Notes: generated from the letters alone by a model not told the origin. Shown: positions 7,790 to 60,705, numbered from the stretch's first letter. The stretch: DNA of 64,000 nt from Octopus sinensis (GCF_006345805.1 NC_043019.1:24303360-24367359), one strand, 5' to 3'. Numbers and translations: made by a program.

Positions 7790-9680
7790 AATGAATACCC
7801 CTAGAACAAAAATGACGGAAAACATCTTCACTGGGCTTAATCTACTACAAGGGAATAGAATACATTTATCCTTGGTTGGAAATTTCCCACAGATGGCGCC
7901 TCAATAAAAACACTGCTGGTTTTGACACCTCGTCATCACAGTCCTCTTATGAGTGTAATGCCAAATAAAAATTATCACAACTGCGTTCATGAGATCCGAA
8001 CCCTGAGTAAAGGTCTTTAGCAGGGCAAGTCTTCTATTGCACAGCAAGGTGGGCTTAGTCGCTATTCAAATACTGCTAAAGAGATTGGAAGTTGGATTCA
8101 AAACGGCAACAGAAACTGTAATGAAATACTATTACAGAAGCTACCCTACCAAAATAGGGCAGAAGAAAAGAATACATAAAACATAGACAGAGAAGGACAT
8201 GCTCCCTATTAAGGAGCAAATATTTTTTTACCTTTAAAAATCTAACCGGGAAAAGGCAGTGGCTATCCAAGCTGGAGTTGGAGAAGACTGCTACAATAAT
8301 GAAAGAGTGTGAACGTGACTACTCTAGACACAAAGTCCAAGAAGTAGAATAACAATAAAGATTAGTAGAGGAAACAGTAAATCCCCACAAATGGAAAAGC
8401 TGCTCGGACAAAGGCAAATTTTAGTTTGTGAGGGAGAGATTATTACAGCAGAAGAAAAAATCTTGCTACAACGCCTGAATGAGGCATGAAATAGCAAAAG
8501 AAGGAAGCCGCCAGGTGTGGGAGGAATCTAAATAGGAAAAACGAAGTAGTGAAAGATATGAACTGATAACGAAAATCTACAATGAGAATATAACAGATAT
8601 AAACGATCTATATATTGCACAGCTTCTGTCGCTCTGGAAACTCTTTGGGTTAGAAACCAAAGGAAAACAATGGACAATGCCACATACTGCAAACAACTAT
8701 TTGAAAAATCAAGTTGAACATTCCTAGAGAGAACTTGGACGGATACATGCAATCATAGAAAAGATGAGGGTGAAGGAACGAACTATAAAGAAAATACAAC
8801 ATATAGGCGCAGGAGTGGCTGTGTGGTAAGTAGCTTGCTTACCAACCACATTGTTCCGGGTTCAGTCCCACTGCGTGACACCTTGGGCAAGTGTCTTCTA
8901 CTATAGCGTCGGGCCAACCAAAGCCTTGTGAGTAGATTTGGTAGACGGAAACTGAAAGAAGCCCATCGTATATATGTATATGTATGTATATATGTGTGTG
9001 TTTGTGTATCTGTGTTTGTCCCCCCAACATCGCTTGACAACCGATGCTGGTGTGTTTACGTCCCCGTAACGTAGCTGTTCGGCAAAAGAGACCGATAGAA
9101 TAAGTACTAGGCTTACAAAGAATATGTCCTGGGGTCGATTTGCTCAACTAAAGACGGTGCTCCAGCATGGCCGCGATCAAATGCCCGAAACAAGTAAAAG
9201 AGTAAAAAGAATAAAAGAGATAAGACACAAATGACTGCCCTAGTTAAAAACTAAGACAAAAAAAATTAAAGCAGTGTCGAGTAAAAGAAGCAAAGAAAGA
9301 TACCAACAGAGAGAATATACTCTTCAAGAACAACAAAAGAAAAATCCTATAAACCACTGAACAACGAAGAGGAGCACCAGAGGAATGATATGCCATATGC
9401 TGGGCAGAAAGAAAATTCTGAGCAGAAATCTGAATGTGAAAGCAAACTGGGTGCGGGAATTTGAGAGATATGGAAGATAGAGTGACACAAATGTAACATC
9501 TACAGATAAGAAAATAGGAAAAGTGATCAAGAAAATAAAAAAACTGGGAAACCTCCGGACCAGATGAAGTCTGGGGTTTCTGGCTCCTAAACCTCTATAA
9601 TATAGACAGCTATACACGACCGTTCTTCACTGATTGTAAAGAAATGGAAAGCCAACATGGATGACAAAAGAGAGAAGTGA
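7790..9680 (+). mobile_element. Decayed 5'/pre-RT fragment of an R4/Dong-like non-LTR element, interrupted by a SINE
   Basis: 9520-9600 translates with frameshifts to KVIKKIK-NW-KPPGPDEVWGFWLLNL, resembling the R4-clade NWKxPGPDxVxGFW motif also seen near 19340-19390 on the minus strand. Confidence 0.55.
8806..9220 (+). mobile_element. Full-length tRNA-derived SINE with internal (TA/TG) microsatellite and CR1-like 3' tail
   Basis: Head ggcgcaggagtggctgtgtggtaag with B-box ggttcagtccc, central caccttgggcaagtgtcttctactatag, and tail ggtgctccagcatggccgc...gaaacaagtaaaag. Near-identical to 20836-21350. Confidence 0.9.
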
Positions 9681-10009: not shown

Positions 10010-12430
10010 GATGAAGGCGCGTCTTTCTCGGCGAGTCAATCATTCAGAGAGCAGATTAACAAGGTAGTCCATTGGAAGTTGTCGGGTGCAATCGTCAACA
10101 ACCGATGGTGGATAGCCTTTAAAAGGGATATTAGAGTAGAGGGTATAGGGTTTAGTAAAGAAGTAGAGTTAGAGGAATCCAATATAGAGGAAGTGCTTAG
10201 AAGACGCATAGCGACCGACATGCTGGCCGCAAGCTTGATTCTTTATCAATACTTCAATACCAAGCACAAAGTTTCGTTTGTTAGAGCTAGAGCGCTTGCT
10301 CTAAGACACAAGTGGATGAAAACCGTTAAATGGGTCCGCTTGGCAGAGGTGCAACGTGGCAAAAACGTCATAATTCGGTCTTTTACAGGCTGGAACGGGC
10401 ACATGCTTCTCGAGTCCAAGCAGATGTTTGCGGAATTTCAGTAGCACTTTGCTGAACTATTCGGAGTGCGCAATGGGTCGGGAGTGGATTTCACCTCCTA
10501 TCTTAACGGCATTCCGTGTCTTTTGGGCAGGAAAACAGAATTCTAAGAATTGTCAAAAAACAGCCGAAGGCGTACGAGAAGCCATGACTATCTGAACAAA
10601 GAAGAAATCTCCGGGGCTGAATGGTATACCCTTCGAGAATTATTTTCATGTCAGATTTCTTTGTTGATTTCTTACCGCAACAAGCAACAGAACAGCAAAA
10701 ATTCTATTACCGTCAGTCGTGGCATGCTGGTGCTGCTGAGAAAGGTCCCGAACAAGGGGTATTTAATAGACAATTTTACGCCTGTAATGTGTTATCAATA
10801 GGTTGGTGCTTGTCGTCAACAAGCTGGTTGAGGACACACAGACATGCGCGCGTATTACATCATAGAGAGGATGGGTGAGAACCCGGGATGGGCGGGCCCG
10901 GGTTAATTTGGAGCTATCAAAAGGTTTTGATTGGGTCGACCACCAATACGGGGAGGCTATTCTCGTGGTGGCCGGTTTCAGGTCCCATTTTAAGAGTCTG
11001 GATCCTTGCAATGCACAGTGACATCTGTTTGGTGGTCAAAGTAAATTGCCACCTCTCGGAATTCTTTAGCATCACACAATCGGTCCATATTGAGTCTTCG
11101 CAATGGAAACTGAATGTGAACTAGGAAGCGGAGGGTTCGTATCAGCTTATGCAGGCATCGTCGCCGTAATAGTGTCGGACATATCGGAAATCGTGGTGAT
11201 GGACACTGCTCTGAAGGAGTATGAAACGGTGACAGGAGCAGAGATTAACCAAGAGAAGTCGATGGACCTGCAGCTAGGTACCTGGAGTGGCATGTCCATG
11301 TCGTCTGACAGTTTCGTAGGGCACTGGAAACAAAGACCGGTTAAACTGCTCGGTTTGTGGTGGGGACCTGGCCTCCAGGCGGACTAGAACTGACGAGAGG
11401 TGACGAGTAGCTTGGGCAGTCTAACCAGAAATGGTCAGAGAGGAAGCTGAAGGGATGGGTGGAAGTGGCGAATGCGTACATCGCTTCTGTTCACTACTAC
11501 AGCCTGAACGTCATCCCTTGCCCTGCTTCGTGGCTGATCAAGCTGCAGTGCTTGCTCTTCTGATTTCTGTGGAAGGGGCGTGTTTCTCTCACAAAACGGA
11601 CCATCTGCTGTTAGCAGCCCCTGAGTGGAGGACTGGCCATGCTGTGGCCAATGATGCACAGGCATGCACTGGTACTGAGACATCTCCAGGGTTTGCTTGA
11701 TGGTGAACAGGTGTCGCCGCCGTTTGTCAGAAAGGATTTTCTGCAGCTTGTCTAATTAATTGAGCTACAGTCCTGAATCGAGCGTAGACCGAGAAAAGTA
11801 GTTTGGATCAAGGAGTATCTGCAAGTGCTCACAGCTCCCGGCCAATCAGGTAATGCGGTCTATGGAAGTTCTACATTGGCGTTTGCCAGAGGACTTTCGA
11901 GCCGGGCTAATTGGATAATTTACAGAAATCCTTGGCCTGGCAGTGTTCCCGGGTTCGAACATGCTCTGTAGGCACGGAAGTGTTGCTGTCGGATGGAATT
12001 TTCCGACATTTGCGCAGGGCGACGAAACGTTCTGCATACACTCTTATGCTTTTAGTCTAGTTTCTGTCTACGCGGGAAAGGTAGTCGGGTTTCTTCAGAC
12101 GTGTGAAGGGTTTCCTTCGGACGTCTTCACTCTTGCTAGTAGTGGGTGGTCAGCACGCCATCTTGGATGTACACCTGGACTGTGTAGGATTAGCCAGTTG
12201 AAGAGGATGTATAAAAGCATCACAAACCTGCTGAGTCGCTTCCAAATGCGTGAATGTGGACATGGGCAAACAACATCGAGCTATCCAGTCGTATCTTGAT
12301 AGAGTATTCTGTAAGCCAGTAGATAGAAATAGCATAAGTTGTCCACAATTCGGTGTCGTCAGTTACACAACCCACAAATCTGTAATCTACGCGGTCGACC
12401 AAAATAGGATCCATAGGCAGAGTCTCTGAT
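10010..12430 (+). mobile_element. Decayed L1/Tx1-like LINE ORF2 (linker, RT and C-terminus), copy A
   Basis: Contains KxPGxxG-type, KAFDxVDH-like (aaaggttttgattgggtcgaccacc), VSAYA and LKEYETVTGAEINQEKS motifs, broken by frameshifts. Confidence 0.8.
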
Positions 12431-20835: not shown

Positions 20836-21000
20836 GGCGCAGGAGTGGCTTTGTAGTAAGTAGCTTGCTTACCAACCACACATTCCTGGGGATTCAGTCC
20901 CGCTGCGTGGAACCTTGGGCAAGTGCCTTCTAATATAGCCTCGGCCCGACAAAAGCCTTGTGAGTGGATTTGGTAGACGGAAACTGAAAGAAGCCCCTCG

Positions 21001-21081
<81 letters not shown>

Positions 21082-21350
21082 GCGCGCGCATCTGTGTGTA
21101 TGTGTGCATCTGTGTGTGTGTGTGTGTGTGCGTGCGTACGTGTGTGTTTGTGTGTCTGTGTCTGTCCCCCCACCATCACTTGACAACCGATGTTGGTGCC
21201 TTTACGTCCCCATTACTTAACGGTTCGGCAAAAGAGGCCGATAGAATAAGTAATAGACTTACAAAGAATAAGTCCTGGGATCGACTAAAGGTGGTGCTCC
21301 AGCATGGCCGCAGTCAAAGACTGAAACAAATAAAAGAAAAGAATAAAAGA
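20836..21350 (+). mobile_element. Full-length tRNA-derived SINE (family of 8806-9220) with an expanded internal TA/TG microsatellite
   Basis: Same head, central domain and tail (ggtggtgctccagcatggccgcagtcaaagactgaaac). Confidence 0.9.
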
Positions 21351-31330: not shown

Positions 31331-31457
31331 TTTTTATCTGTAGAATTAGTATTAATATTCTTTTCCTTCTTGAAGCAATTAATCAATATTATTATAATGC
31401 CCAGCAATCAATACTTACGTGCATATATGCACACAGAGACACACCATATGCATACAC

Positions 31458-31508
<51 letters not shown>

Positions 31509-31606
31509 AATACGCACGCACACATATAGACATACACTTACATAAATACGTGTGTGAGTCTGTGTTTAAGTTACACGAAAATATCAGCTTCCAACCATCT
31601 TGATTG

Positions 31607-31650
<44 letters not shown>

Positions 31651-32729
31651 TATATATATGTATGTATACATACATATATATGCATACATACATAATACAT
31701 ACATGCATGGATACATACATACGTACATGCATGCATGCATACATACATGCATACATACATATAAATATACATACATGCGTACACCTGCTTTTACATATAC
31801 ATACATGCATGCTTTTAAAAAGCAGAATAGGTATTTATGGAATTTGGGCTCAAAATAGGTACATTTCTTATAATTTGGGGAGCCTCTTCCCAGTTTCCAG
31901 AGACATTCGACTACTTTCGGCACTATTCGAATCTGAACATGTTTATTTTTTATTTATAGATTCTTTCGCTTGAACACTTTCTCACTTTACTGATTTTCTG
32001 CCCTAAGCATTGCTTTTTTGACATTTGGTTAAGTCAAGTCGTCTGCAGTTTCCTTTCATTCAATAGGTACTTTCATGTCAATGAAGATCGTTATCTTCGT
32101 TTTCGGCATACACATTTTCATGTCTTCTTCTACGCTATTAATTTGAGGTGGATGCTAAGGAGAATTCATAATATTTTCACTCTGATTTTAGTCTTCTGTC
32201 CTATTTTGTTTGTGTATTCTAGGATATGTAATCGGCATAAAGAAATTTACTGACAGAAAACTGTCACTTGTGAGAGATTATTTTCATGTATGATGTAGGA
32301 CTTTGGTTTTGGAAAGCAATATTATTGCTAGCAGTTAATTTGTTATTGGGAGTCTTCTTTTAATAATGTTTATAGTTTTCCTTCAGTGTTTTCAGTTCTT
32401 GCACAATATCTTATTTATATCCAATTTTATATTCGTATAGTATTGTATATAATTTACATATTGTAATTTATTGATACTTTACAAAATTAAACAAGAACCC
32501 GCATCTAAAAATATCTCCCTTTATCTAATATTTAGCTTGTTCCAAGCTTTTACTTTACCAAGTCATCAATTTCGTTTATTGCCGAAGTGCATGGAAATCA
32601 ATGTGTACTATAATCAACCGTCTACCATTAGTATTGAATTTCCAAATTCTACTCAGTTTGATTTCTGTTGTTGCTATTGAGTGTATATCAGAATATTAAT
32701 ATATTTGTTTACATTTGTATTCATTTTAG

Positions 32730-33064
32730 GTAATGCAGGTAGTGATCGAAGGCGCCGAAGAAAATTTACATTTACACCTTTTGATCCGAATCACAAGCCA
32801 CCAACCAAAAAAGACCTTGTCTATTTTGAGAAGTCGCCAGAATTTTGTAACCAAAATAATGGAATTGGTTTCAAAGGAACAGTTGGTCGAGAATGCAATG
32901 ATACATCCCTTGGACTAGAAGGTTGTGACCTTATGTGTTGTGGCCGAGGTCACCAATCTCAGAGTTACATGGTTCTAGAACGATGTAATTGCACTTTCCG
33001 CTGGTGCTGTGAGGTCATGTGTGAAGCGTGTAAAGTCACAAAAATGAGGCACACGTGCCTATGA
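32730..33064 (+). CDS. Wnt1: Wnt1 terminal coding exon (G-NAGSDRRRRRKFTFTPFDPNHKPP...CCEVMCEACKVTKMRHTCL*)
   Basis: Acceptor tcattttag ends at 32729 and joins in phase 1 with the exon ending at 24416 (g+gt = Gly). Contains the Wnt1-diagnostic HKPPxxxDLVYFEKSP, the CDLMCCGRG and CNCTFRWCC cysteine pattern, and a TGA stop at 33062-33064. Confidence 0.96.
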
Positions 33065-38299: not shown

Positions 38300-40110
38300 T
38301 TAAAGTTTCAGCTCAGAGTTGAGGCCATGCTGATGTACCGCCGCCGTTTTGCGCTACACTGCTATTACTAGGAGCCTCCTCTAATATGTGGCACTTGATG
38401 AAGAATAGAGTTTGATACGGCTACCCTCATTTGCACCTCTTGCCGTGAGGTAGGCTCATCAGGGACTCTCGACAGGAAGAGGTCCAGCTTTGATTTAAAA
38501 ACCCCTACATCTACTTTGTGCAAGTTCCTCAGACTCTTTGGGAGAATATTAAAAAGCTGTGGGCCCTTGAAACCCAGGATGTTGCAGTAACTGGTCCTGA
38601 AGCGTGATGGCATTGCTGGGATCTTTGGCACCATGCAATGTCGTCCCGTTCTGGCATTGGTGTAGCCTTCAATGCCAAAATTTGGCACAATTCCTTCCAG
38701 GATCTTCCAGATATATATTACTGCATACGTCTCCAGTCTTCTCTCCAGGGAGTAGAGTTTCAACCTTTCCCAGTAGCTGAGCTGTTGCAAAGAGACGATC
38801 TTCTTTGTGAATCTTCTCTGGATTGCTTCAAGGTCCGCTGTTAATCTCACACTAGTAGGTGACCATAGCTGTGAGCCATATTTCTGGCATATGGCTTGCA
38901 CAGAAGACATGAAACATTCTAGTTTCGTGTCAATGTCTGGTGTGGAGAGAAGTTTCGGCCAGTCCTCTCTGAGGATCTCTTTTTGGATCGATTTCCAATC
39001 TGCTTTGTAGAAGTTCAGATTGGAGAGATTTTGGGTGCTTCCTTTAGGCTGTATGTCTCTGGTTACTTTCGGCCCAAGCATAGACAGCTCTATTATGTTG
39101 TGATCCGAGACTAATGTCGGTGTCACTTTCACATCATGAATGATGTCCATATTGTTCGTGAAGCAGAGATCCAGAATGTTATTCGCCATAGTTGGTTTGA
39201 GTACAACTTGCTCCATGAATAAGGCATTGGTGAGGTTGAGCAGGGACTCCACCTGTGCTTGCTTGCAATGAGTCATTCCTGAGAGTATGAGACCTTCGGG
39301 CCATTTGACGTTGGGAAAGTTGAAATCACCCATAAGAACTATGGTCACGTGGTGTTCCAGATTCATGAGGATTTCTTTAATTCTTGTGAGGCAATCTTCA
39401 AACTTGCCTATGTGGTTTGGAGCATCAGGTGAGCAATATGTATTGTATATGACTATATTATGTTGTATTATGCATACCATTAGTGTCCCATACCGAATTT
39501 GAGTATGACAGTAAGAGGTCATCACGGATGTATACAGCAACTCCACCATGGCTCCTTTCCCTTCTGTCTGTTCGCAGTATGGCATATTTTGGTACGTGTA
39601 CTTCTGCGTCCTCTATGTCAAGGCTGAGGTGAGTTTCCACGAGTGCTATGCATAGGGCTTGATTGCATGCAGTAAGATCTCTCAGGAAAGAAATCTTGCT
39701 TTTATTTTGATGCAACAGGCCCCCAATATTTAGTAAAAGTATTGGGGTGACGACTGTGCAGGCGTTAGGGGAGGCCATCCCGTGTCTGTTGACTGTGATG
39801 ATCTTGTATAGTGGTGGGAAAGGTTCCTTCTTTTTGCTAGGCGCAGCTAGGTTAGCTGCTGAACAATCCTTTGCGCCATGCATAAAAAAGACTCTTGCTC
39901 AGCTGCTGCGTTGCGCAGAACATCTGAGGAGCACACTTCTTTTCTGAATGTTGTCCTGGGAGGCACTTCTTGCCTTTCCTCGCTAAAGTTCTTCTCTTTA
40001 AGACCCCTGTAGTTCTGGCGGGGTGTTGGGTGGGCAAACCGGCAGTTTTTGCCGTCCTCCCCATGCCCTGCAGATAAAATTTACAGGTTCTTGGGTACCT
40101 TCTAGATTTC
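38300..40110 (-). mobile_element. CR1-like LINE with ORF1 CCCH-finger remnant, APE endonuclease and C-terminus, but the RT domain deleted in frame
   Basis: ORF1 remnant CKFYLQG..GKNCRFAHP at about 40030-40090. EN motifs LLNIGGL, IALVETHL, GGVAVYI, VLMGDFNFP, ILDLCFT and SDHNII. These join directly through ICQKY to GSQLWSP and the C-terminal YWERL..YSLERR. 3' tail at 38305-38345. Confidence 0.9.
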
Positions 40111-41930: not shown

Positions 41931-42028
41931 TTCCTTTACTTTCGACATATGTTTCGAAGACAACATGGTTTTATTCCAAAGGAATAAACGGTGTAAGATG
42001 CAATCTTCTCATCAGGAAAGAAAGAGAC
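41931..42028 (-). ncRNA. Type I hammerhead ribozyme (all core nucleotides present)
   Basis: Minus strand: ctttc-CUGAUGA-gaagau[insert]gucuuc-GAAAC-auau-GUC|gaaag. Stem I is CUUUC/GAAAG, stem II is GAAGAU/GUCUUC, stem III is short and palindromic (ACAUAUGU). Predicted cleavage is between 41944 and 41943. Confidence 0.85.
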
Positions 42029-42096
42029 CCTCTCTCAACAACATGACATTATTGCAATTACGATGACTGCCTACATGGTAAACAGAACGTTACTAA

Positions 42097-42190
42097 CTCT
42101 CTTTCTTTCCTGATGAGTAGATTGCATCTTACACCGTTTATTCCTTTGGAATAAAACCATATTGTCTTCGAAAGTAAACGAATTTTATTG
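42097..42190 (+). ncRNA. Inverted, inactivated copy of the hammerhead (stem III and cleavage site deleted)
   Basis: ctttctttc-CTGATGA (42110-42116)-...gtcttc-GAAAgtaaacg. The 12-nt catatgtcgaaa is missing between two tcgaaa repeats. Confidence 0.75.
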
Positions 42191-42370
42191 TTTGTTCCCC
42201 CACCATCGGTTAGAAACCGATGTTTTAGTGTTTACGTCCCCATAACGTAGCATTTCGTCAGAAGATATCGATAGATAAGCAACAGGCTTACAAAGAAGAA
42301 GTCCATGGGTCGATTACTTCAACTAAAAGGCGGTACTCCAGCATGGCTCTACTCAAATGACTTAAACAAG
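42190..42370 (+). mobile_element. 3' half of the 8806-family SINE
   Basis: Contains gtttacgtccccataacgtagc and ggcggtactccagcatggc. Confidence 0.8.
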
Positions 42371-42546
42371 TAATACAGTAAACATATATATATATATGCG
42401 TGTGTGGCTATATATATGGATATAATATATATATAAAATATATAATATATATATATATATAGATATATATATATATAATATATATATATATATATAGATA
42501 TATATATATATATAGATATATATATATATATACATATATATATACA

Positions 42547-43187
42547 TATCTTTAACTTTTGACCTGAACATTTAAAAAATAATTTTGTAACGAAACACTT
42601 TCAAACTTCGGGTACTGGTAGAATGTGTCATATAAAACATGTTTTACTCTTAGCATTTTTGAGAAAAACTTATATTTACGAAGATATTTCACCTTAATTT
42701 CTCGTATTTCGGTAATTTCAACCAATCAATGAGGTGTATTCAGCTGAATACAATTACTTCTGTTGTACTGCAGTTGCTTGTAAACAAGAACGGTGTATAT
42801 TTCGTTTGTCACTGTCATTTATGACAAACCTAACCCTAAAACCCTAACCCTAACCCTAAAATCCTAACCTTAACCCTAAAACATTAAAACCAGTACAAAC
42901 GCACGAACAATGTCATACATAACAGTGACAAACAAAAAATACACCACTGATAGTTGTTGTTGACAAACAACGGCAGTAATTTTATTCAGCTGAATACACG
43001 TCATTGACTGGTTGAAATTACCGAAATACGAGAATTTGAAGGTGAAATATCTTCGTAAATACAAGTTTTTCTCAAACATGCTACGAGTAAAACGTTTTAT
43101 ATGACACATTCTACCAGTTTCCGAAGTTTGAAAGTGTCTAGTTACAAAAAATTATCTTTTAAATCTGTAGGTCAAAAGGTAAAATCC
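42547..43187. mobile_element. Fold-back MITE with about 280-bp TIRs and central telomeric (CCCTAA)n
   Basis: Arms at about 42547-42826 and 42912-43187 are reverse complements. CCCTAA-like repeats occupy 42828-42880. It sits in a TA microsatellite, so no TSD is resolvable. Confidence 0.85.
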
Positions 43188-43224
<37 letters not shown>

Positions 43225-43383
43225 TGATACACACACACACATATATATATGTGTGTGTGCTTGTGTATACTCAATATATTTCAAAGCGTCGAAATACTCC
43301 GCAGCATATTTAGGTGCATTCATACACGCAAGATATAATTTTAAAAAAATAAATATATAATATATTTAATGTACTTGCAAGTT

Positions 43384-43869
43384 ATATTATAATATGCGGA
43401 TCGTGAGTGTATAGCGGTAATCCAAATAGATGAGGAAGTTGGTATAAAATTATTTTAAAAGGAATCCTGAGGAGGTGCAAAGTCTGACGGCCGTTTTGAG
43501 ATGTAGTTGGTATGGGCGAGTTCATTCCAACCATAACAGTCATCTATATTTCTCTCGTCAGAGTTAATCTACATGATTTATAAAAGAGTTATTTAAATCT
43601 TCATTTTAAGCAACATGAGAAATTTAAGAATTTTAAAAATCGAATGCTGTTTCGAAACATACTGTTCAGGCGTGTGTGTGATTAACTCTCATGAGAAAAA
43701 TATAGATGATTTTTATGGTTGGAATTAACTCGCGCATACCAACCTATATTATCTCAAAACGGCCGTCAGACTTTGCACCTGCTCAAAATTCCTTTTAAAA
43801 TCATTTTATACTAACTTTCTTATCTATGTGGATTACCGCTATACATTCACCATTCGCATATTTTAATAT
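43384..43869. mobile_element. MITE with about 170-180-bp TIRs
   Basis: gtgagtgtatagcggtaatcc...gcaaagtctgacggccgttttgagat on the left is mirrored by atctcaaaacggccgtcagactttgcac...ggattaccgctatacattcac on the right. Confidence 0.8.
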
Positions 43870-44199
43870 CCTCATTGATTTTAATACGGTCATGCAACCC
43901 TGCAAGTACATTTATGCATTTTTATATAATTATATATTTGTAAATTTTTATATTACTTCTTGTGTATATGAATGCACCTATGTTTGCTGTGGAATATTCC
44001 AACGCTTGGAAATATATTGAGTGAATATGAACACTGACCTTTGAAACTTGTTTGTCTGTCCTTGTTTGTCCTCTCTGTGTTCCTTGGTTTTATATTCCTG
44101 AGGCTCTATTAGAGCGCTAATTAGTTGTGCTGTATAAGGAGATAATTATCCCATTTATTTCTTCATTATCTATATATTCTGTTTATTTCCGTCACAGGT

Positions 44200-45916: not shown

Positions 45917-46260
45917 CGGAAACCGGGAGACTGGCCCTATGAATCTATATGACTCGGCAAGGAATTTTTATTAGCTTTACTACTTTTATACTCACACACA
46001 CACACACACATACACACAGAGGTTTATATGTATATATTTATGGGCGTGTTTCTCTCTATATATATATATGTGTGTATATGTATGCACATGAATACATACA
46101 CACACATCTATATAATGATAAACACGCACATAAATATATACATAAAAACCTCTGTGTGTGTGTGTGTGTGTGAGTATGTGTGTGAGTATAAAAGTAGTAA
46201 AGATAATAAAAATTCCTTGTCGAGTCATATAGATTCATAGGGCCAGACTCCTGGTTTCCG
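45917..46260. repeat. About 344-bp near-perfect palindrome (fold-back duplication of a SINE tail and flanking microsatellite)
   Basis: cggaaaccgggagactggccctatgaatctatatgactcggcaagg is mirrored by ccttgtcgagtcatatagattcatagggccagactcctggtttccg. The centre is near 46088 with an approximately 8-nt loop. Confidence 0.9.
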
Positions 46261-47381: not shown

Positions 47382-48594
47382 CACACATGCACATTTCTAT
47401 ATTGCATACGTTTGCCTGCTTTCATGTAGTTAAATGTGTATTTATATGTATATATTTGTATGTATGATCAGCTTAGATATTCAATAAGAGGATACGCATG
47501 TGTGCGTGAGTGCATTTGTGTGACTTTGTGTTCGATCATATCTGTGTGAAGGCACACATGCAAGTGTGCGTTTATGCGTCGATCTGCGTGTGAATACTTA
47601 CATATAAGCTGTAACATAAAAAATTTATATCTAACAAACTTTACTCCATCTCAGATTGCACAACACTATATTCCACCTGGCTTCATTTCACTTAGTTGAC
47701 TTTCTATCACTGTTTCTCTGGTAAAGCTTCTTACTCTCTGTAGCTTATATATCACATTACTCTTGATAATAACCAGACAAATGTTTCTATATGCTGGAGA
47801 GAGACTTTAACATTATAAATTCAATAGATATATGTGTATCTAAGTTCTCATGAGGTAAGGGTACACTTTATCCAATGGACATCTGCATGGTTTACGTCCA
47901 CCTAAATTCATGCAGAAAAATTGAATCGGCCTGATATTGTACTGAACGACATTTATCCAACATACTAGGAAGGATCCGTTATCTCAAGAACTCTAATCGA
48001 ACTTCTTAACTATTCAGATTTATGCTCACGAAAAAATGCGACTCACTACAGATTGGAACTCTAGAATGACAGTATCTTCTGCTTTTGCCGTATTCTGATT
48101 TCTGAGCGTTAAATGGCTGGTAAAGAAGTCCTTGAAATATTCCAAGGTTGTATTGCTCGTTGTTTTTTTCTTCTTTTTTGTTCATTTGTTTATAGTATAT
48201 TACAAAGAGGTCTTTCTTGAGTGGATTTTATATCATTGGGTTCTTTGTTGTCATCTATATATTTGGATCCTCAGTGAACTTGGTGAGAAAGACTGTTCAT
48301 ACAACTGGGAACATATCTGAACGTAAAGTCACAAACAATTATCACCACATCTGGTTTTTTTTTAGAGACTTTACTGAGAGACAGCATTCAAAGGTTTTAA
48401 TCTGAATATGCCGATATTTTAATGAAAATAAAACTGCAAATTTTCATAGTAATTTGTATTCATTTTATCAGTTTTACACGCGCGCGCGCACACACACACG
48501 CATATGTGTACAAACATACGCACACACATATAAATAAAATTCAGTACCATGTATTTGTTTTGAAAATATGTATGTGAGTGTGTGTGTATGTATA

Positions 48595-48643
<49 letters not shown>

Positions 48644-48950
48644 ATATATATATGTAAATGTACGTAAGTACGTATATATATGTATATATGCACATATATA
48701 TGTATACATACATGTGTGTACATATATATGTATACATACATGTGTGTATATATATATATATGTATATTATATGTATATATATATATATAAGTATCTATAT
48801 ATATGTATATGTATATATATGTACATATGTATATATATATGTATATATATATATATGCATATATATGTATATATATGTATATATATGTATATATATTGTG
48901 TGTATATATGTATATACGTATATCTATATGTGTATATGTATATACGTATA

Positions 48951-49026
<76 letters not shown>

Positions 49027-49408
49027 GTGTGTGTGTGTGTGTGTGTGTTGTGTGTATATATAATATATATATAAAGAACAAAGAAAATGGTGATAAGATT
49101 GAACAACAATGTATTTGCATCAATTATTATTTATTAATAATTTACAAAAAGACTGCATCACATATATGTGTGTATACATATGTACACACGTACACACACA
49201 CACGCCACACACGCACACCACACACACACACACAACACACAACACACACACAACACACTATATATATATATATATATACATAATTTATATAAATATGGAT
49301 AGGATCGTTATTTAAATATCGATCATATCAAGTGGCCAGCATGGAAATAAAGACCTTCAAAGGTAATACTTATTATTAAAATTATAATTTAGGGTATCTA
49401 AGAGATAC

Positions 49409-49984: not shown

Positions 49985-50302
49985 TGCGCTACAACCATAT
50001 GTGCGCGACATGGTGACTTCATATCTAAATAAACGGCGCATGACCCAGTTAGAATTTTCGCTAAAAGGATTCTTAAATAAGGGTTGTTTATTGATGCTGA
50101 ACAAAACACCAATGTTTCAAGAGGTGAATTATTCAAACCCAAAACAATTCTTCCCAACATGTGACTATCCTTCTCCTCGACAACTTCTGCTCGTAATCAG
50201 AAACGCACAAATCGTCGGCCAAGAAGGGATATGCTCATCTGGTTAAGGGGAAGCAATCGACAAGCAAACCTATAGCATTGAGCAGAATATTTGTTGTAGC
50301 CA
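49985..50302 (-). mobile_element. Diverged internal fragment of the 563-bp TAA-flanked repeat
   Basis: caaccatatgtgcgcgacatggtga...gagcagaatatttgttgtagcca is the reverse complement of about 53255-53600. Confidence 0.8.
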
Positions 50303-50304
50303 TG

Positions 50305-50338
<34 letters not shown>

Positions 50339-50559
50339 TGTATGTATGTATGTATGTATGTATGTATGTATGTATGTATGTGTATGTATGTATTATGTAT
50401 GTACGTATATGTGTGTATATATGTATGTGTATGTATGTATGTATGTATTTATGCATGGATGTATGTGTGTATGTATGTGTATATATGTATGTGTGTATGT
50501 ATGTATGTATGTATGTATGTATGTATGTATGTATGTATGTATGTATGTATGTATGTATG

Positions 50560-50960
50560 CATGTATGTATGGTGCCAAGTCGGCTTCGCTGGCCACAGCA
50601 TTTGCTCCTTTCTCCTAGTGCTTTCACCATGCTGTTCCAAACCTTTTTCTTAAAACATCTTCCCACCTGATTGAAGGTCTTCCGAGTGTTCTCTTCCGTT
50701 CGCGCGGGTACCACTCGAGAACTGCACAGGTCTATGGATACTCTGTGAACCATGCGATATGACCAAACTGTCGTAGCTTTCCGTGTTGTTATTCTGTGAC
50801 GACCTCTTCACTCCATTTCTATTCCTGATTTCCTCATTCCGTATCTGACCTCTTAGCGAGATTCCCAACATTGACTTTCCATGGCTCTCTGCGCCGTAAA
50901 CAGATGTTACTCTTCTCTGTTTATCAAGGTCCAAGTCACAGGCCCATATAGCATTTATTC
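50560..50960 (-). mobile_element. 3' fragment of an RTE-like LINE
   Basis: MLGISLRGQIRNEEIRNRNGVK followed by a WYPR/GRP-type C-terminus. The 3' end runs into (TACA)n. Confidence 0.75.
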
Positions 50961-50974
50961 TTCTTTTTGTTTCA

Positions 50975-51138
50975 GTCATTTGACTGCAGCCATGCTGGAG
51001 CACCGCCTCTAGTCGAACATATCGACCCCAGAACTTATTGTTTGTATGTCTAGTACTTATTCTATCGGACTCTTTTGTCGAACCGCTAAGTTACGGGGGC
51101 GTGAACATACGAAAATCGGTTGTGAAGAGATGGTGGGG

Positions 51139-51171
<33 letters not shown>

Positions 51172-52200
51172 CACACACACACGCACACACACAAATACGC
51201 ACACATATTTGACGGGATTTTCTCAGTTCCATCTACCAAATACACTCACACGGCTTTGGTAGGTATATAGTAGATATTTGCCTAAGGTGTCACGCAGTAC
51301 CTGGATCCATGTGGTTGGGAAGCAAGTTTCGGATCTTTTCCTTTTGAACGGCACTTTTCAACACAATTTCTAGTTAACTAAACACTTTAAAACTTCGTAT
51401 ACTGGTAGAATGTGTCAAAATAAAACATTTTTTCTCTTGGCTTTCTTGAGAAAATTGTAATTTGTAAGTTTAACGTAGTTTAATTTTTCGAATTTTAACC
51501 AATCAATTGCCTCTAGTGAGCTAAAATCATTTGCTGCATCTAAAACTGAGACAACATCCTGTCACTAACCCTAATCCTAACCCTCACCCTCACCCTCACC
51601 CTAACCCTTACCCTAAATTTTAGCCTTTCATTTTTTTTTTTTTGATTGTTAAATTAATTTAAGGATAACAATTAAGAAGAAAAAAACGAAAGGCTAAAAC
51701 GAAAGCAATGGAAAGTAATTTAAACAATTAACAAACAAAATAATTCTATAATTTTATACTCACGCTTTCCGTACGTATACATAACGAAAGGCTAAAACGA
51801 AAGCAAAAACTCAAAACAAAAACAAAACGAATAATTTTAGACACACGCGTAACAATTAAATTAATTTAACAATTAAGAAAAAAACCGAAAGGCTAAAATT
51901 TAGGGTTTGGGTTAGGGTGAGGGTGAGGGTTCGGGTTAGGGTTAGTGACAGGATGTTGTCTCAGTTTTAGACGCAGCAAATGATTTTAGCTCACTAGAGG
52001 CATTCATTGGTTAAAATTCGAAAAATTAATCTACGTTAAACAAATTACAATTTTCTCAAGAAAGCCAAGAGAAAAAAAATGTTTTATTTTGACACATTCT
52101 ACCAGTATACGGAGTTTTAAAGTGTTTAGTTAACTAGAAATTGTGTTGAAAAGTGCCGTTCAAAAGGAAAATATCCCAAGTTTCTACTCACACAACCAAT
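50975..52200 (-). mobile_element. 8806-family SINE interrupted in its tRNA head by the 51331-52176 MITE
   Basis: SINE body at 50975-51330. The head resumes at 52177-52200 (caagtttctactcacacaacc). Confidence 0.8.
51331..52176. mobile_element. 846-bp fold-back MITE with about 300-bp TIRs bearing telomeric repeats and an 8-bp TSD CAAGTTTC
   Basis: Termini GGATCTTTTCCTTTTGAAC and GTTCAAAAGGAAAATATCC. CAAGTTTC at 51323-51330 and 52177-52184. CCCTAA/CCCTCA repeats at 51566-51616 and TTAGGG/TGAGGG repeats at 51900-51945. Confidence 0.93.
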
Positions 52201-52918
52201 GTCTGTGCCTACATGGATAGATTTATACAATAAAATAGTTTTAGTCAGATGCTTATGTGTTTCTTTCACGGTCAAGGAACTCGTATAGCATCACGAAATT
52301 CCAGCTTATTTGCTGTTTTGAAGTGTGATAGGAAGTGGGAAGTTAGGAGCCTTGTGCAGTATATAAATTTGTGGTGGAGAGTCGTAATAAGACAGAGAGC
52401 GAATGACTCAAAATAGTTGAGACTGTTGTTTATTTCCCAAGCATTTCTATTTGAGTCAAATGTTAATCAAAGATATCACAGTTATATCCGCCACATGAAA
52501 CTTGCGCCAAAAATCCTCGCATGGACTTAATTTGTCTCACAGATCTTGGATTAGTTCCTCCCTTACAGATCATACTATCGCGATGTCTGTTCATTGTGTT
52601 CTCTTAGACCCACATTCTGTGAACTTGAATGTTCCTCGCATTGCTCTTCCTACCACTACCACATCTGATCTCGGACGTGATTACTAGTCACGTGCAATTC
52701 TCGAATTCTTCTCTTCTATCCACATCACCCACTCATATTGTTTTCACACGCCGACCCCAGCACTGAAACCTACACCCAGTCATTTATTCTAAGAACTTTG
52801 TTTTGAAATCGTTCAGATGCAACATTTCAAGCAGAAACGTAACGCCATCTTGCCACTCTTCCAGAGCTAGGAAAAATCATGGGGACATGGGTATAGGCTA
52901 TTCTTCTCGACCAAACTC

Positions 52919-54491: not shown

Positions 54492-54822
54492 TGGTAACTG
54501 GTACTTAATTTATCGACCCCAAAAGAATGAAAGGCATGGATCAATAACACTCTTAAGTTTTCTATGTGTTTGTAGCCGTATTTCAAGTTAATTGCTACCT
54601 ATTTGTACCTGTACTTGTTTCGTTGTTTTTTGTTTGCATGTATTTCACTTAATGGACACAAACAAGCACACAAACACACGCATCAAAACGGAATCAAGAA
54701 ATGTATGTACATACGTGTGTATACTTTATGTGTGTGTGCGTGGTTCAGGCATTAGGGTGTGGCACATACAAACGCAAAGTCGTTCAGGAAGAAAGTGCGG
54801 AACCCTCATCTACTGTTTACGA

Positions 54823-54824
<2 letters not shown>

Positions 54825-54890
<66 letters not shown>

Positions 54891-54907
54891 ATCTATCTAT
54901 CTATCTA

Positions 54908-54943
<36 letters not shown>

Positions 54944-54950
54944 TTATCTA
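54825..54950. repeat. (TATC)n microsatellite
   Basis: Read directly from the sequence. Confidence 0.97.
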
Positions 54951-54992
54951 TCTGTCTGTCTCTCTCCTATATGTATATGTATGTATATATAT

Positions 54993-55043
<51 letters not shown>

Positions 55044-55059
55044 ATATATATATATAGGG

Positions 55060-59864: not shown

Positions 59865-60705
59865 GTTTCAGCTACTGAGCTGTGGCCATGCTGGGGCACC
59901 GCCATTTGGTTTGCTACATGATTTTACCTCACGAATGCTTTTTAGCAACTGCCATTTGGTGCATGAGAGAGTTCGATGCAGCTGCCCTCATCTGCACCTC
60001 CTGCCGTGAAGTTGGTTCATCCGGGACACCTGACAGGAAGAGATCCAGTCCTACTTTAAAGACATCCGCATCTACACCATGCAGGTCCCTCAGGTTCTTC
60101 GGGAGGATATTGAAGAGCTGTGGGCCTCTGAAGCCCAGGCTATCACAGTACCTTGTCCTACATCTTGATGGCAAATTTGGAGTCCTTGGTACTACGCAGT
60201 GGCGCCCGGTTCTGGCATTTGTGTGACTCTCGATGCCAAAGTTTGGGACAAGTCCTTCCAGGATCTTCGAGATATATATTATGGCATATCTTTCTCGCCT
60301 ACGCTCCAGGGAATAGAGCTTTAATCTCTTGAGTCTTTCCCAGTAGCTTATATGCTGCACAGAGGCTATCTTCTTCGTGTAGCTTCGTTGGATCGCCTCA
60401 AGTTCTGTGATCAACTTGACACTGGATGGTGACCATAGCTGAGAGCAATAGTCAATGTGGCTTAGGACAAGTGTCTTCCAGAGGACCATCATGGTTTCTT
60501 GTTCTAAAGGTTCTAAGAATCCATCCGGCCAGCCGTCTACATTTCATTGCCAGGTCTCGTCATCACTCATGTGAATACCCAGGTCACGCACTGATTGTGC
60601 CTCTGGGATTGCAATCCCTCCGGGTCCAGTGTATTCATTGGCTATTGCATTCAGTTTTGCATGCTGATAGCATAAAGCTTGAAACTTTTCAGCATTGAAC
60701 TGAAT
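59865..60705 (-). mobile_element. 5'-truncated CR1-like LINE with an open C-terminal ORF2 segment (59929-60492) and poly(A)-like tail
   Basis: LWKTLVLSHIDYCSQLWSP...YWERLKRLKLYSLERRRERY, upstream RDLGIHMSDD, and a 3' tail ggcggtgccccagcatggccacagctc...gctgaaactgg(A)n. Confidence 0.9.

What the first reader, a model, noticed from the sequence alone, without database searches (positions are those of the whole stretch)
51331..52176. Telomere-bearing fold-back DNA transposon with an 8-bp TSD
It has about 300-bp TIRs with GG...CC termini and an exact CAAGTTTC duplication. The inner TIR ends carry CCCTAA (left) and TTAGGG (right) repeats, oriented like the two ends of a linear mini-chromosome around a 280-bp spacer. 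TTAGGG is the molluscan telomere repeat, and the 7 G-tracts per arm can form G-quadruplexes. An 8-bp TSD with GG termini fits Merlin, hAT or MULE-like superfamilies, but none is proven. The element could spread interstitial telomeric sites or recruit telomere proteins (inference; loosely analogous to ciliate TBE elements).
Basis: partly seen in the sequence, partly recalled or inferred. Interest (0 to 1): 0.75.

Follow-up and report, generated by a model that had tools for sequence, protein, structure and literature searches.

The report
Octopus fold-back MITE carrying telomere repeats
This is a genuine small, non-coding "cut-and-paste" transposon in an octopus-type genome whose hairpin arms carry a short, decayed run of the telomere repeat; that makes it a concrete example of a mobile element scattering telomere-like sequence inside chromosomes, but otherwise it is an ordinary member of a well-known class.

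Summary
Window 51331-52176 is an 846-bp fold-back element with arms of about 320-330 bp and GG...CC termini. It has an exact 8-bp duplication (CAAGTTTC), and about 8 degenerate CCCTAA units in the left arm mirror about 7-8 TTAGGG units in the right.

It is a true insertion. It sits inside a SINE-like repeat, and two other copies of that repeat in the window read straight through the site with a single copy of the 8-mer.

A second, older relative (42546-43187) shares the outer 205 bp of each arm at about 70% identity. It carries the tract at the homologous position, just inside a shared TGTCACT motif, but on one arm only. The tract is therefore ancestral family cargo. The "mini-chromosome" orientation in A follows simply from inverted duplication.

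The host is an Octopus-type cephalopod, where TTAGGG is the telomere repeat. The element has no coding capacity, and no transposase was found in the window.

The structure fits Merlin best (GG termini, 8-bp TSD, long TIRs; Merlin is reported in cephalopods). MULE, Zisupton and Novosib are not excluded, and hAT and P termini do not fit.

No further copies could be retrieved, and Dfam/Repbase could not be checked.

Verdict: a real, non-autonomous fold-back MITE, a new member of a known kind. A function for the telomere tract is untested. Interest is modest.

The parts
51323..51330 (.). Left copy of the 8-bp target-site duplication, CAAGTTTC
   Evidence: Read directly. Paralogous copies of the host repeat have a single CAAGCTAC here.
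51331..51662 (+). Left arm (TIR) of element A. It starts GGATCTTTTCCTTTTGAACGG and contains the conserved blocks ACTGGTAGAATGTGTCA, AACCAATCAAT and TGTCACT.
   Evidence: Inverted-repeat blocks, four-arm alignment, stem.
51565..51616 (+). CCCTAA-type telomere-like tract in the left arm (8.7 units, 86% matches; includes CCCTCA variant units)
   Evidence: TRF, 12-mer search, G4 motif on the minus strand at 51581-51613.
51663..51855 (.). Central, mostly unpaired AT-rich loop of A. Direct copies of AACGAAAGGCTAAAA lie in and beside it (51685, 51783; a third, with one mismatch, at 51884 in the right arm). A local hairpin (51618-51651 / 51666-51699) straddles the left arm-loop boundary.
   Evidence: The loop has no match elsewhere in the window.
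51900..51945 (+). TTAGGG-type telomere-like tract in the right arm (7.7 units, 85% matches; TGAGGG variant units shared with the left arm)
   Evidence: TRF, G4 motif at 51903-51941.
51856..52176 (-). Right arm (TIR) of element A. Its reverse complement starts GGATATTTTCCTTTTGAACGG.
   Evidence: outer arms 97.8% identical.
52177..52184 (.). Right copy of the 8-bp target-site duplication, CAAGTTTC
50954..51322 (+). Host SINE-like dispersed repeat (with internal (CA)n) into which A inserted. It runs through the left TSD copy (51323-51330) and resumes after the right one, at 52185 to about 52215.
   Evidence: The joined flanks align in one HSP (J 24-431, junction at 400) to the paralog at 9206-8800, and also to 21338-20903.
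42546..43187 (+). Element B, an older and diverged member of the same family (642 bp; arms about 90% identical), embedded in an (AT)n microsatellite so that its TSD cannot be read
   Evidence: blastn at about 70% over 205 bp of each arm, alignment, nhmmer E = 1e-74.
42828..42879 (+). Single CCCTAA-type tract of element B. It begins 16 nt inside the shared TGTCACT motif of the left arm. The right arm has no counterpart.

Best explanation
Element A (51331-52176) is a non-autonomous class II transposon of the fold-back/MITE type in an Octopus-type genome.

A transposase encoded elsewhere recognises the conserved GGAT(C/A)TTTnCCTTTTGA termini and subterminal blocks, cuts the element out and re-inserts it with staggered cuts 8 bp apart. 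This copy landed inside a SINE-like repeat and duplicated CAAGTTTC.

The most likely superfamily is Merlin (terminal GG, 8-bp TSD, long TIRs), but this is unproven.

The telomere-like hexamer tract is ancestral cargo of the family. It sits at the boundary between arm and loop, just inside a conserved TGTCACT. In the lineage leading to A the inverted repeat grew inward to include the tract and about 45 bp beyond it. That automatically gives CCCTAA on the left and TTAGGG on the right. In the older copy B the tract is present on one side only.

The tract is about 15% decayed and looks passively carried, so the family's effect is to scatter short interstitial telomeric sequences (and G4-prone DNA) around the genome.

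Shown: insertion, TSD, TIRs, family relationship, homologous tract position, lack of coding capacity, host taxon.
Inferred: superfamily, direction of the one-tract/two-tract change, passivity of the tract.
For: - Exact 8-bp TSD abutting GG...CC termini.
- Paralogous empty site: the joined flanks align continuously across the junction to two other copies of the host repeat, which have one copy of the 8-mer.
- Arms 97.8% identical and a stem of -329 kcal/mol, z = -44.8.
- A second family member at 42546-43187 has homologous arms (nhmmer E = 1e-74).
- The tract lies at the homologous position and in the same orientation in A-left, A-right and B-left. There are 7-8 units in each, and the two arms of A share TGAGGG variant units.
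- The longest open frame in A is 48 aa. The 20 longest high-complexity ORFs of the window give only a LINE endonuclease in Pfam.
- Host: the LINE ORF hits Octopus sinensis and Argonauta hians best. The host SINE occurs 7 times in 21.5 kb of O. sinensis.
- Merlin diagnostics are TIRs of 24-462 bp, terminal 5'-GG and an 8-9 bp TSD (PMC8101967). Among molluscs, Merlin is almost restricted to cephalopods (PMC10294476).
- TTAGGG is the cephalopod telomere motif (PMC13218726).
Against: - Only two copies could be examined, so 'family feature' rests on n = 2.
- B's TSD is unreadable because it sits in (AT)n, and its left terminus reads AT rather than GG.
- No autonomous partner or transposase was found, so the superfamily rests on structure alone.
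- 8-bp TSDs also occur in MULE, Zisupton and Novosib. The last two are also reported in cephalopods.
- The tract region differs more between A's arms (89.9%) than the outer arms do (97.8%). I attribute this to slippage, but did not test it.
- Dfam/Repbase could not be queried, so the family may already be catalogued.
Confidence: 0.75

Rival explanations
1. Same kind of element, but mobilised by a non-Merlin transposase. The candidates are a MULE/Foldback-type element, Zisupton or Novosib. hAT and P are the least likely.
For: - 8-bp TSDs are not unique to Merlin (my knowledge of the superfamilies).
- MULEs and Drosophila FB elements typically have very long TIRs and G-starting termini (my knowledge).
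- Zisupton and Novosib are reported as nearly cephalopod-restricted among molluscs, alongside Merlin (PMC10294476).
- No transposase link was obtained here.
Against: - A meets all three published Merlin structural diagnostics.
- MULE/FB TSDs are more often 9-11 bp (my knowledge).
- The hAT terminal consensus YARNG and the P-type CATG/CA termini do not match GGATC (sequence; the consensus motifs are from my knowledge).
Confidence: 0.4
2. The telomere-like tract is functional for the element or the host. Examples: it binds TRF/POT1-like proteins, forms G-quadruplexes that help hairpin extrusion, excision or silencing, or seeds new telomeres after breakage. On this view selection retains it.
For: - The tract is retained at the same position in two copies whose arms have diverged by about 30%.
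- 3 of the 6 canonical G4 motifs in the 64-kb window lie in this family.
- All telomere-like tracts in the window are in the family.
Against: - The tracts are 14-15% degenerate, roughly what neutral decay since the A/B split would give.
- B has lost, or never had, the second tract.
- Unit number has not expanded (7-8 units).
- No binding or structural data exist.
Confidence: 0.1
3. The tracts were added independently by telomerase during repair of breaks at the tip of the hairpin or cruciform (Nergadze-type insertion of telomeric repeats at double-strand breaks). On this view the family repeatedly attracts telomerase rather than inheriting the tract.
For: - Telomerase-mediated insertion of TTAGGG at break sites is documented in mammals (PMC2246262, PMC7215372).
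- Long palindromes are break-prone (general knowledge).
- In B the tract lies in the loop, directly against the end of one arm.
- The sequence between AACCAATCAAT and TGTCACT aligns poorly between A and B.
Against: - In A and B the tract has the same orientation and abuts the same TGTCACT motif, with similar unit number. One ancestral event is more parsimonious.
- A's two arms share variant units (TGAGGG runs), so they were copied from each other and not synthesised separately.
- Healing both ends of a central break would give TTAGGG...CCCTAA, the opposite of what is seen (inference).
Confidence: 0.08
4. It is not a transposon: a local palindromic duplication or assembly artefact whose flanking 8-mer match is chance.
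For: - Fold-back structures and microsatellites are very common in this window.
- Long palindromes can be assembly artefacts.
Against: - Paralogous empty site with a single 8-mer.
- A second copy 8 kb away has homologous termini in a different context.
- The TSD lies exactly at the TIR edge. The chance of an 8/8 match at a fixed position is about 1.5e-5.
- The arms differ by substitutions and indels (97.8% and 89.9%), which is not expected of a chimeric-read artefact.
Confidence: 0.02

Closest known systems
Merlin superfamily MITEs (IS1016/IS1595-related DDE transposons; Feschotte 2004, as summarised in PMC8101967)
   Same: Terminal 5'-GG-3', an 8-bp TSD, and a TIR length within the published 24-462 bp range. 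Merlin is reported in cephalopod genomes (PMC10294476).
   Different: No transposase link was shown. Internal telomere-repeat tracts are not a described Merlin feature in the papers I could read.
Fold-back elements (Drosophila FB of the MULE clade; Galileo/1360 of the P superfamily) - from my own knowledge
   Same: Most of the element is a long, internally repetitive inverted repeat that forms a hairpin. Non-autonomous copies predominate. The inner parts of the arms are built from short repeats.
   Different: FB makes 9-bp TSDs and Galileo 7-bp. Their termini differ. Their arm repeats are element-specific tandem units, not the host telomere hexamer.
Tandem-repeat-containing MITEs of molluscs (the Donax trunculus elements are cited in PMC10294476; the names pearl and DTC84 are from my knowledge)
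   Same: Small non-autonomous mollusc elements that carry an internal microsatellite or tandem array and spread it around the genome.
   Different: Those elements carry tetranucleotide or satellite monomers and many are now linked to Helentrons. They do not have 320-bp TIRs with an 8-bp TSD, and none is reported with the telomere repeat.
Oxytricha telomere-bearing elements (TBE1-3)
   Same: DNA transposons whose inverted repeats contain the host's telomere repeat.
   Different: In TBEs the (G4T4) repeats form the extreme termini. The target is a 3-bp ANT, and the elements are autonomous Tc1/mariner members tied to ciliate genome rearrangement. Here the tracts lie 235-285 bp inside the ends, the TSD is 8 bp and nothing is encoded.
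Short interstitial telomeric sequences inserted by telomerase at double-strand breaks (PMC2246262, PMC7215372)
   Same: A short (about 8-unit), degenerate TTAGGG run at an internal chromosomal site. This is a possible origin of the ancestral tract.
   Different: Those ITSs sit in unique DNA without TIRs or TSDs and are not mobile. Here the tract travels inside a transposon. Reviews list that route only as a proposal.

Membership tests
Class II TIR transposon, non-autonomous (MITE / fold-back type) | Terminal inverted repeats | tested here: met
   Arms 51331-51662 and 51856-52176. Outer part 97.8% identical; single stem at z = -44.8.
Class II TIR transposon, non-autonomous (MITE / fold-back type) | Target-site duplication of fixed length flanking the TIRs, with an empty site lacking the element | tested here: met
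   Exact CAAGTTTC on both sides. Two paralogous copies of the host repeat are uninterrupted and have one 8-mer. An orthologous empty site could not be obtained.
Class II TIR transposon, non-autonomous (MITE / fold-back type) | No transposase coding capacity | tested here: met
   The longest stop-free frame in A is 48 aa and in B 91 aa, all within the arms. A probe built from the arm frames found no protein homolog.
Class II TIR transposon, non-autonomous (MITE / fold-back type) | Multiple dispersed copies sharing the termini | tested here: inconclusive
   Two copies in 64 kb. None in 21.5 kb of O. sinensis or 21 kb of Argonauta. Public DNA collections gave nothing. Genome-wide copy number is unknown.
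Merlin superfamily | 8- or 9-bp TSD | tested here: met
   8 bp. Criterion from PMC8101967.
Merlin superfamily | Conserved terminal 5'-GG-3' | tested here: met
   GGATC / GGATA at both ends of A and GGATT at the right end of B. The left end of B reads ATATC inside (AT)n.
Merlin superfamily | TIR length 24-462 bp | tested here: met
   About 320-330 bp.
Merlin superfamily | An autonomous partner with the same TIRs encoding a DDE_Tnp_IS1595 transposase | not testable with these tools
   The window has no transposase and no Octopus genome could be searched by DNA.
hAT superfamily | 8-bp TSD together with short TIRs whose termini fit YARNG (consensus from my knowledge) | tested here: not met
   The TSD length fits, but the termini are GGATC and the TIRs are about 320 bp.
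Oxytricha-type telomere-bearing elements (TBE) | Telomere repeats at the extreme ends of the TIRs, a 3-bp ANT target, and a Tc1/mariner transposase | tested here: not met
   The tracts start 235 bp inside the ends, the TSD is 8 bp and there is no ORF. TBE features.
Telomerase-inserted short ITS | A TTAGGG run inserted at a break, absent from the orthologous locus, with no TIR or TSD of its own | not testable with these tools
   This could describe the origin of the ancestral tract. The present tracts are inherited parts of a TE, and no pre-tract relative is available.

The most novel reading that the evidence does not exclude
The telomere tract is not passive cargo. On this reading the family exploits telomere biology, or is exploited by it. 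The paired outward-pointing G-strands flanking the loop might let an excised or broken element be recognised and capped as a tiny linear molecule. Alternatively they might recruit shelterin-like proteins or G4 helicases that control hairpin extrusion and transposition, or supply ready-made seeds for chromosome healing and karyotype change in cephalopods. That would make it a metazoan counterpart of the ciliate telomere-bearing elements.
Probability: 0.06. Interest if true: 0.75.

Novelty: new member of a known kind. Interest (0 to 1): 0.3.

Why it matters

Here a defined element has clean TIRs, a TSD and an empty site, and it demonstrably moved a TTAGGG tract to a new locus. Every telomere-like tract in this 64 kb belongs to the family.

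If the family is abundant, it could account for a sizeable share of the short ITSs and G4 motifs in octopus genomes. That would matter for telomere-motif-based scaffolding (for example, using TTAGGG to find chromosome ends) and for interpreting ITSs as fusion relics.

Beyond that, it is a routine MITE annotation.

Tried and rejected
1. Pattern scans for further copies. The two-block pattern ACTGGTAGAATGTGTCA-N65-95-AACCAATCAAT and a shorter 24-base pattern were run against JGI metagenomes, IMG/VR and GTDB genomes. All gave zero matches, because these collections hold no cephalopod DNA.
2. Exact-product look-ups of window ORFs beside A (117 aa) and near B (405 aa), to fetch orthologous loci. 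Neither is on record. No database protein matches the window's Wnt exon or LINE ORF at more than 70%, so the source genome does not appear to be in the protein collection.
3. A concatenated six-frame probe of the A and B arms against 5.8 billion proteins, in case ORFs had been called inside other copies. Of 7192 word-sharing candidates, none scored E <= 10. I therefore did not spend the exhaustive representative search on the same question.
4. Sampling cephalopod DNA around LINE homologs. I obtained O. sinensis L001, Argonauta L002 and three ENA loci (L003-L005). None held a family copy by blastn or by an nhmmer arm profile. The ENA loci lack the host SINE, so I take them not to be octopus.
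5. Pfam on the 20 longest high-complexity ORFs of the window. Only a LINE endonuclease domain was found, and no transposase.
6. Ten literature searches. None turned up a MITE or fold-back element with internal telomere repeats in molluscs or elsewhere. The mudminnow and TE-to-satellite papers were irrelevant.
7. Four other fold-back structures in the window were checked for the same termini or TSD. They are unrelated.
8. Rejected: the 'mini-chromosome' reading, because the TIR extends inside the tracts and B has one tract.
9. Rejected: healing of both ends of a central break, because it predicts the opposite orientation.
10. Rejected: hAT and P assignment, because the termini do not fit.

Full report

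Yes, in full.
- Termini and TSD: the sequence shows GGATCTTTTCCTTTTGAACGG starting at 51331. Its near-perfect reverse complement (GGATATTTTCC...) ends at 52176. CAAGTTTC lies immediately outside both ends (51323-51330 and 52177-52184).
- Boundary check: a scan of all boundary choices within +-25 nt recovers this as the only solution with matching termini and a TSD.
- Inverted repeat: the repeat finder reports gap-split inverted blocks covering 51328-51662 versus 51856-52179 at 87-96%.
- Arm identity: by global alignment the outer 235 bp of the arms are 97.8% identical, and the tract plus inner part 89.9%.
- Hairpin: as single-stranded DNA the 846 nt fold into one stem of -329 kcal/mol, against -77 +- 5.6 for shuffles (z = -44.8).
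- Tracts: TRF finds period-6 arrays at 51565-51616 (8.7 units, 86% matches) and 51900-51945 (7.7 units, 85%).
- Chance: TTAGGGTTAGGG with up to 1 mismatch occurs 14 times in the window against 0.14 expected by chance.
- G-runs: each arm has seven GGG runs and a canonical G4 motif.

**2. Is it a transposon insertion?**

Yes. The left flank belongs to a SINE-like dispersed repeat with an internal (CA)n.
- I joined the two flanks, keeping one TSD copy. The product aligns in a single HSP (positions 24-431, junction at 400, E = 4e-77) to another copy of that repeat at 9206-8800, and also to 21338-20903.
- In the multiple alignment, A's flanks read GTGGTTGGGAAGCAAGTTTC|TACTCACACAACCA. The paralogs read GTGGTTGGTAAGCAAGCTACTTACCACACAGCCA. 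The host repeat therefore continues across the site with one copy of the 8-mer.
- This is a paralogous empty site. It shows both the insertion and the 8-bp duplication.

**3. A second family member.**

The only other telomere-like tract in the window (42828-42879) lies in a 642-bp fold-back element, B (42546-43187).
- blastn aligns the outer ~205 bp of each A arm to each B arm at about 70%.
- An nhmmer profile of the four arms finds exactly these four arms (E = 1e-62 to 1e-74) and nothing else in the window or in the fetched loci.
- All four arms share ACTGGTAGAATGTGTCA, and three of four share AACCAATCAAT.
- The alignment carries homology inward to a shared TGTCACT.
- In both arms of A the tract starts immediately after TGTCACT. 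In the left arm of B it starts 16 nt after it, in the same orientation and with 8 units. After the same motif, B's right arm runs into about 29 bp of loop and has no tract.
- B's arms are only 89.9% identical, so B is the older copy.
- B sits in (AT)n, so its TSD (atatatac / atatatat) is uninformative.

**4. What the tract is.**
- It occupies a homologous position and orientation in two copies whose arms differ by about 30%, so a single ancestral acquisition is the parsimonious reading.
- The two arms of A share variant units (runs of TGAGGG). They were therefore copied from one another after the tract had already decayed.
- In A the inverted repeat continues about 45 bp inside the tracts (AATTTTAGCCTTTC...TTAAATTAATTTAA). 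The pair CCCTAA(left)/TTAGGG(right) is thus simply part of a TIR that includes the tract.
But that is one of only two outcomes any inverted duplication can give, and B shows the one-sided state.
- Healing of both ends of a central break by telomerase would give the opposite order (inference).
- The 14-15% decay of the tracts is of the order expected for neutral decay since the A/B split (inference). I see no sign of maintenance or expansion.
- The origin of the ancestral tract is open. It could be telomerase-mediated repair of a break at the hairpin tip (mechanism documented in mammals, PMC2246262 and PMC7215372). It could equally be capture of an ITS or of subtelomeric DNA.

**5. Host.**
- The window is an animal genome dense in microsatellites. 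It contains a Wnt1-type last exon (32681-33064; best database matches only 65%) and LINE fragments.
- The 405-aa LINE ORF (Exo_endo_phos_2 domain) has its best named hits in Octopus sinensis and Argonauta hians.
- The host SINE-like repeat occurs seven times at 80-88% in 21.5 kb of O. sinensis. Only its core is present in Argonauta, and it is absent from three other loci.
- The source is therefore Octopus or a very close relative.
- TTAGGG is the only experimentally determined cephalopod telomere motif, from Amphioctopus areolatus (PMC13218726).

**6. Mechanism and superfamily.**
- A has no coding capacity (longest frame 48 aa), so it must be mobilised in trans.
- The window encodes no recognisable transposase.
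- Published Merlin diagnostics are TIRs of 24-462 bp, a conserved terminal 5'-GG-3' and 8- or 9-bp TSDs (PMC8101967). A meets all three.
- A mollusc-wide survey found Merlin, Zisupton and Novosib almost restricted to cephalopods (PMC10294476).
- From my own knowledge, hAT termini (YARNG) and P termini (CATG/CA) do not fit GGATC.
- Also from my own knowledge, MULE/Foldback elements share the long TIRs but usually make 9-11-bp TSDs, and Zisupton and Novosib also make 8-bp TSDs.
- I therefore favour Merlin at roughly even odds and do not file the element as a Merlin member.

**7. Comparison with known systems.**
- The element works like any fold-back MITE.
- Its only unusual trait is that the internal simple repeat is the host telomere hexamer.
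- Ciliate TBEs differ in every defining respect: repeats at the extreme termini, a 3-bp ANT target, and autonomous Tc1/mariner status.
- Mollusc tandem-repeat MITEs carry other repeats.
- Reviews mention TE-borne telomeric repeats only as a hypothesised ITS source (PMC6410037 and PMC9693754).
- My ten literature searches found no described MITE with this cargo. Dfam and Repbase could not be consulted, and automated octopus repeat libraries may already contain it unnamed.

**8. Limits.**
- No further copies could be obtained. DNA pattern scans of three collections, exact-ORF look-ups and a six-frame protein probe all returned nothing.
- Only 21.5 kb of Octopus DNA could be sampled.
- The conclusions about the family rest on two copies.

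**9. Verdict.**
- The core interpretation (a mobile fold-back DNA element with an 8-bp TSD that carries telomere repeats) is supported.
- The mini-chromosome and TBE analogies and the functional ideas are unsupported or untested.
- It is a new member of a known kind, of modest interest, mainly as a clean example of transposon-mediated dispersal of interstitial telomeric sequence.

Noticed in passing
window 8800-9206 (-), 20903-21338 (-), 50954-51330 + 52185-52215 (+), 42189-42369 (-): A roughly 400-bp SINE-like dispersed repeat with an internal (CA)n/(TA)n microsatellite of variable length. It occurs seven times in 21.5 kb of Octopus sinensis (L001), and only its core (positions 53-169) is present in Argonauta hians (L002). 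It served as the paralogous empty site for element A.
   Followed up: partly
window 32681-33064 (+): An open frame encoding the cysteine-rich C-terminal exon of a Wnt1/wingless-type protein (Pfam PF00110 in all hits). The best database matches are only about 65% identical (annelids, arthropods, unnamed contigs), so this species' gene is not in the protein collection.
   Followed up: partly
window 38368-39883 (-) and 59929-60492 (-): LINE remnants. A 405-aa ORF carries an Exo_endo_phos_2 endonuclease domain joined directly to an RT C-terminal region, which suggests an internal deletion. A 187-aa ORF at 59.9 kb repeats that same C-terminal region. The GC-rich 10-16 kb block also holds RT-like frames that gave no Pfam hit.
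   Followed up: partly
window 41952-42173, 43269-44022 (with nested arms at 43384-43869 and 43506-43743), 45917-46260, 1136-1391: Four other hairpin or fold-back structures with arms of 76-159 nt at 79-97%. Their termini are unrelated to A and B, and no clean TSD was found at the repeat edges. They are probably other MITE families, two of which directly flank element B.
   Followed up: partly
window 51498-51508, 52003-52012 (-), 42720-42730, 43008-43018 (-): A CCAAT-box-like motif, AACCAATCA(AT), is conserved about 165-175 bp inside the element ends in three of the four arms. The fourth reads AACCAGTCA. It could be a transposase-binding or promoter-like site, and it was not examined.
   Followed up: no
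window 51618-51898: The centre of A is itself built from repeats. The unit TAACAATTAAGAA(G)AAAAAAACGAAAGGCTAAAA occurs once inverted (51618-51651) and twice direct (51666-51699 and 51867-51898), with a partial copy at 51783-51806. This suggests several rounds of palindrome growth.
   Followed up: no
whole window, e.g. 348-1052, 31408-31973, 48419-49283, 50235-50753, 54592-55057: Microsatellite density is extreme: (AT)n, (CA)n, (ATGT/ACAT)n and (CATA)n-type arrays that generate long spurious ORFs (MYVCMYVC..., IYIYIY..., HTYIHTYI...). The three G4 motifs that lie outside the family are at 10885, 16327 and 30849.
   Followed up: no
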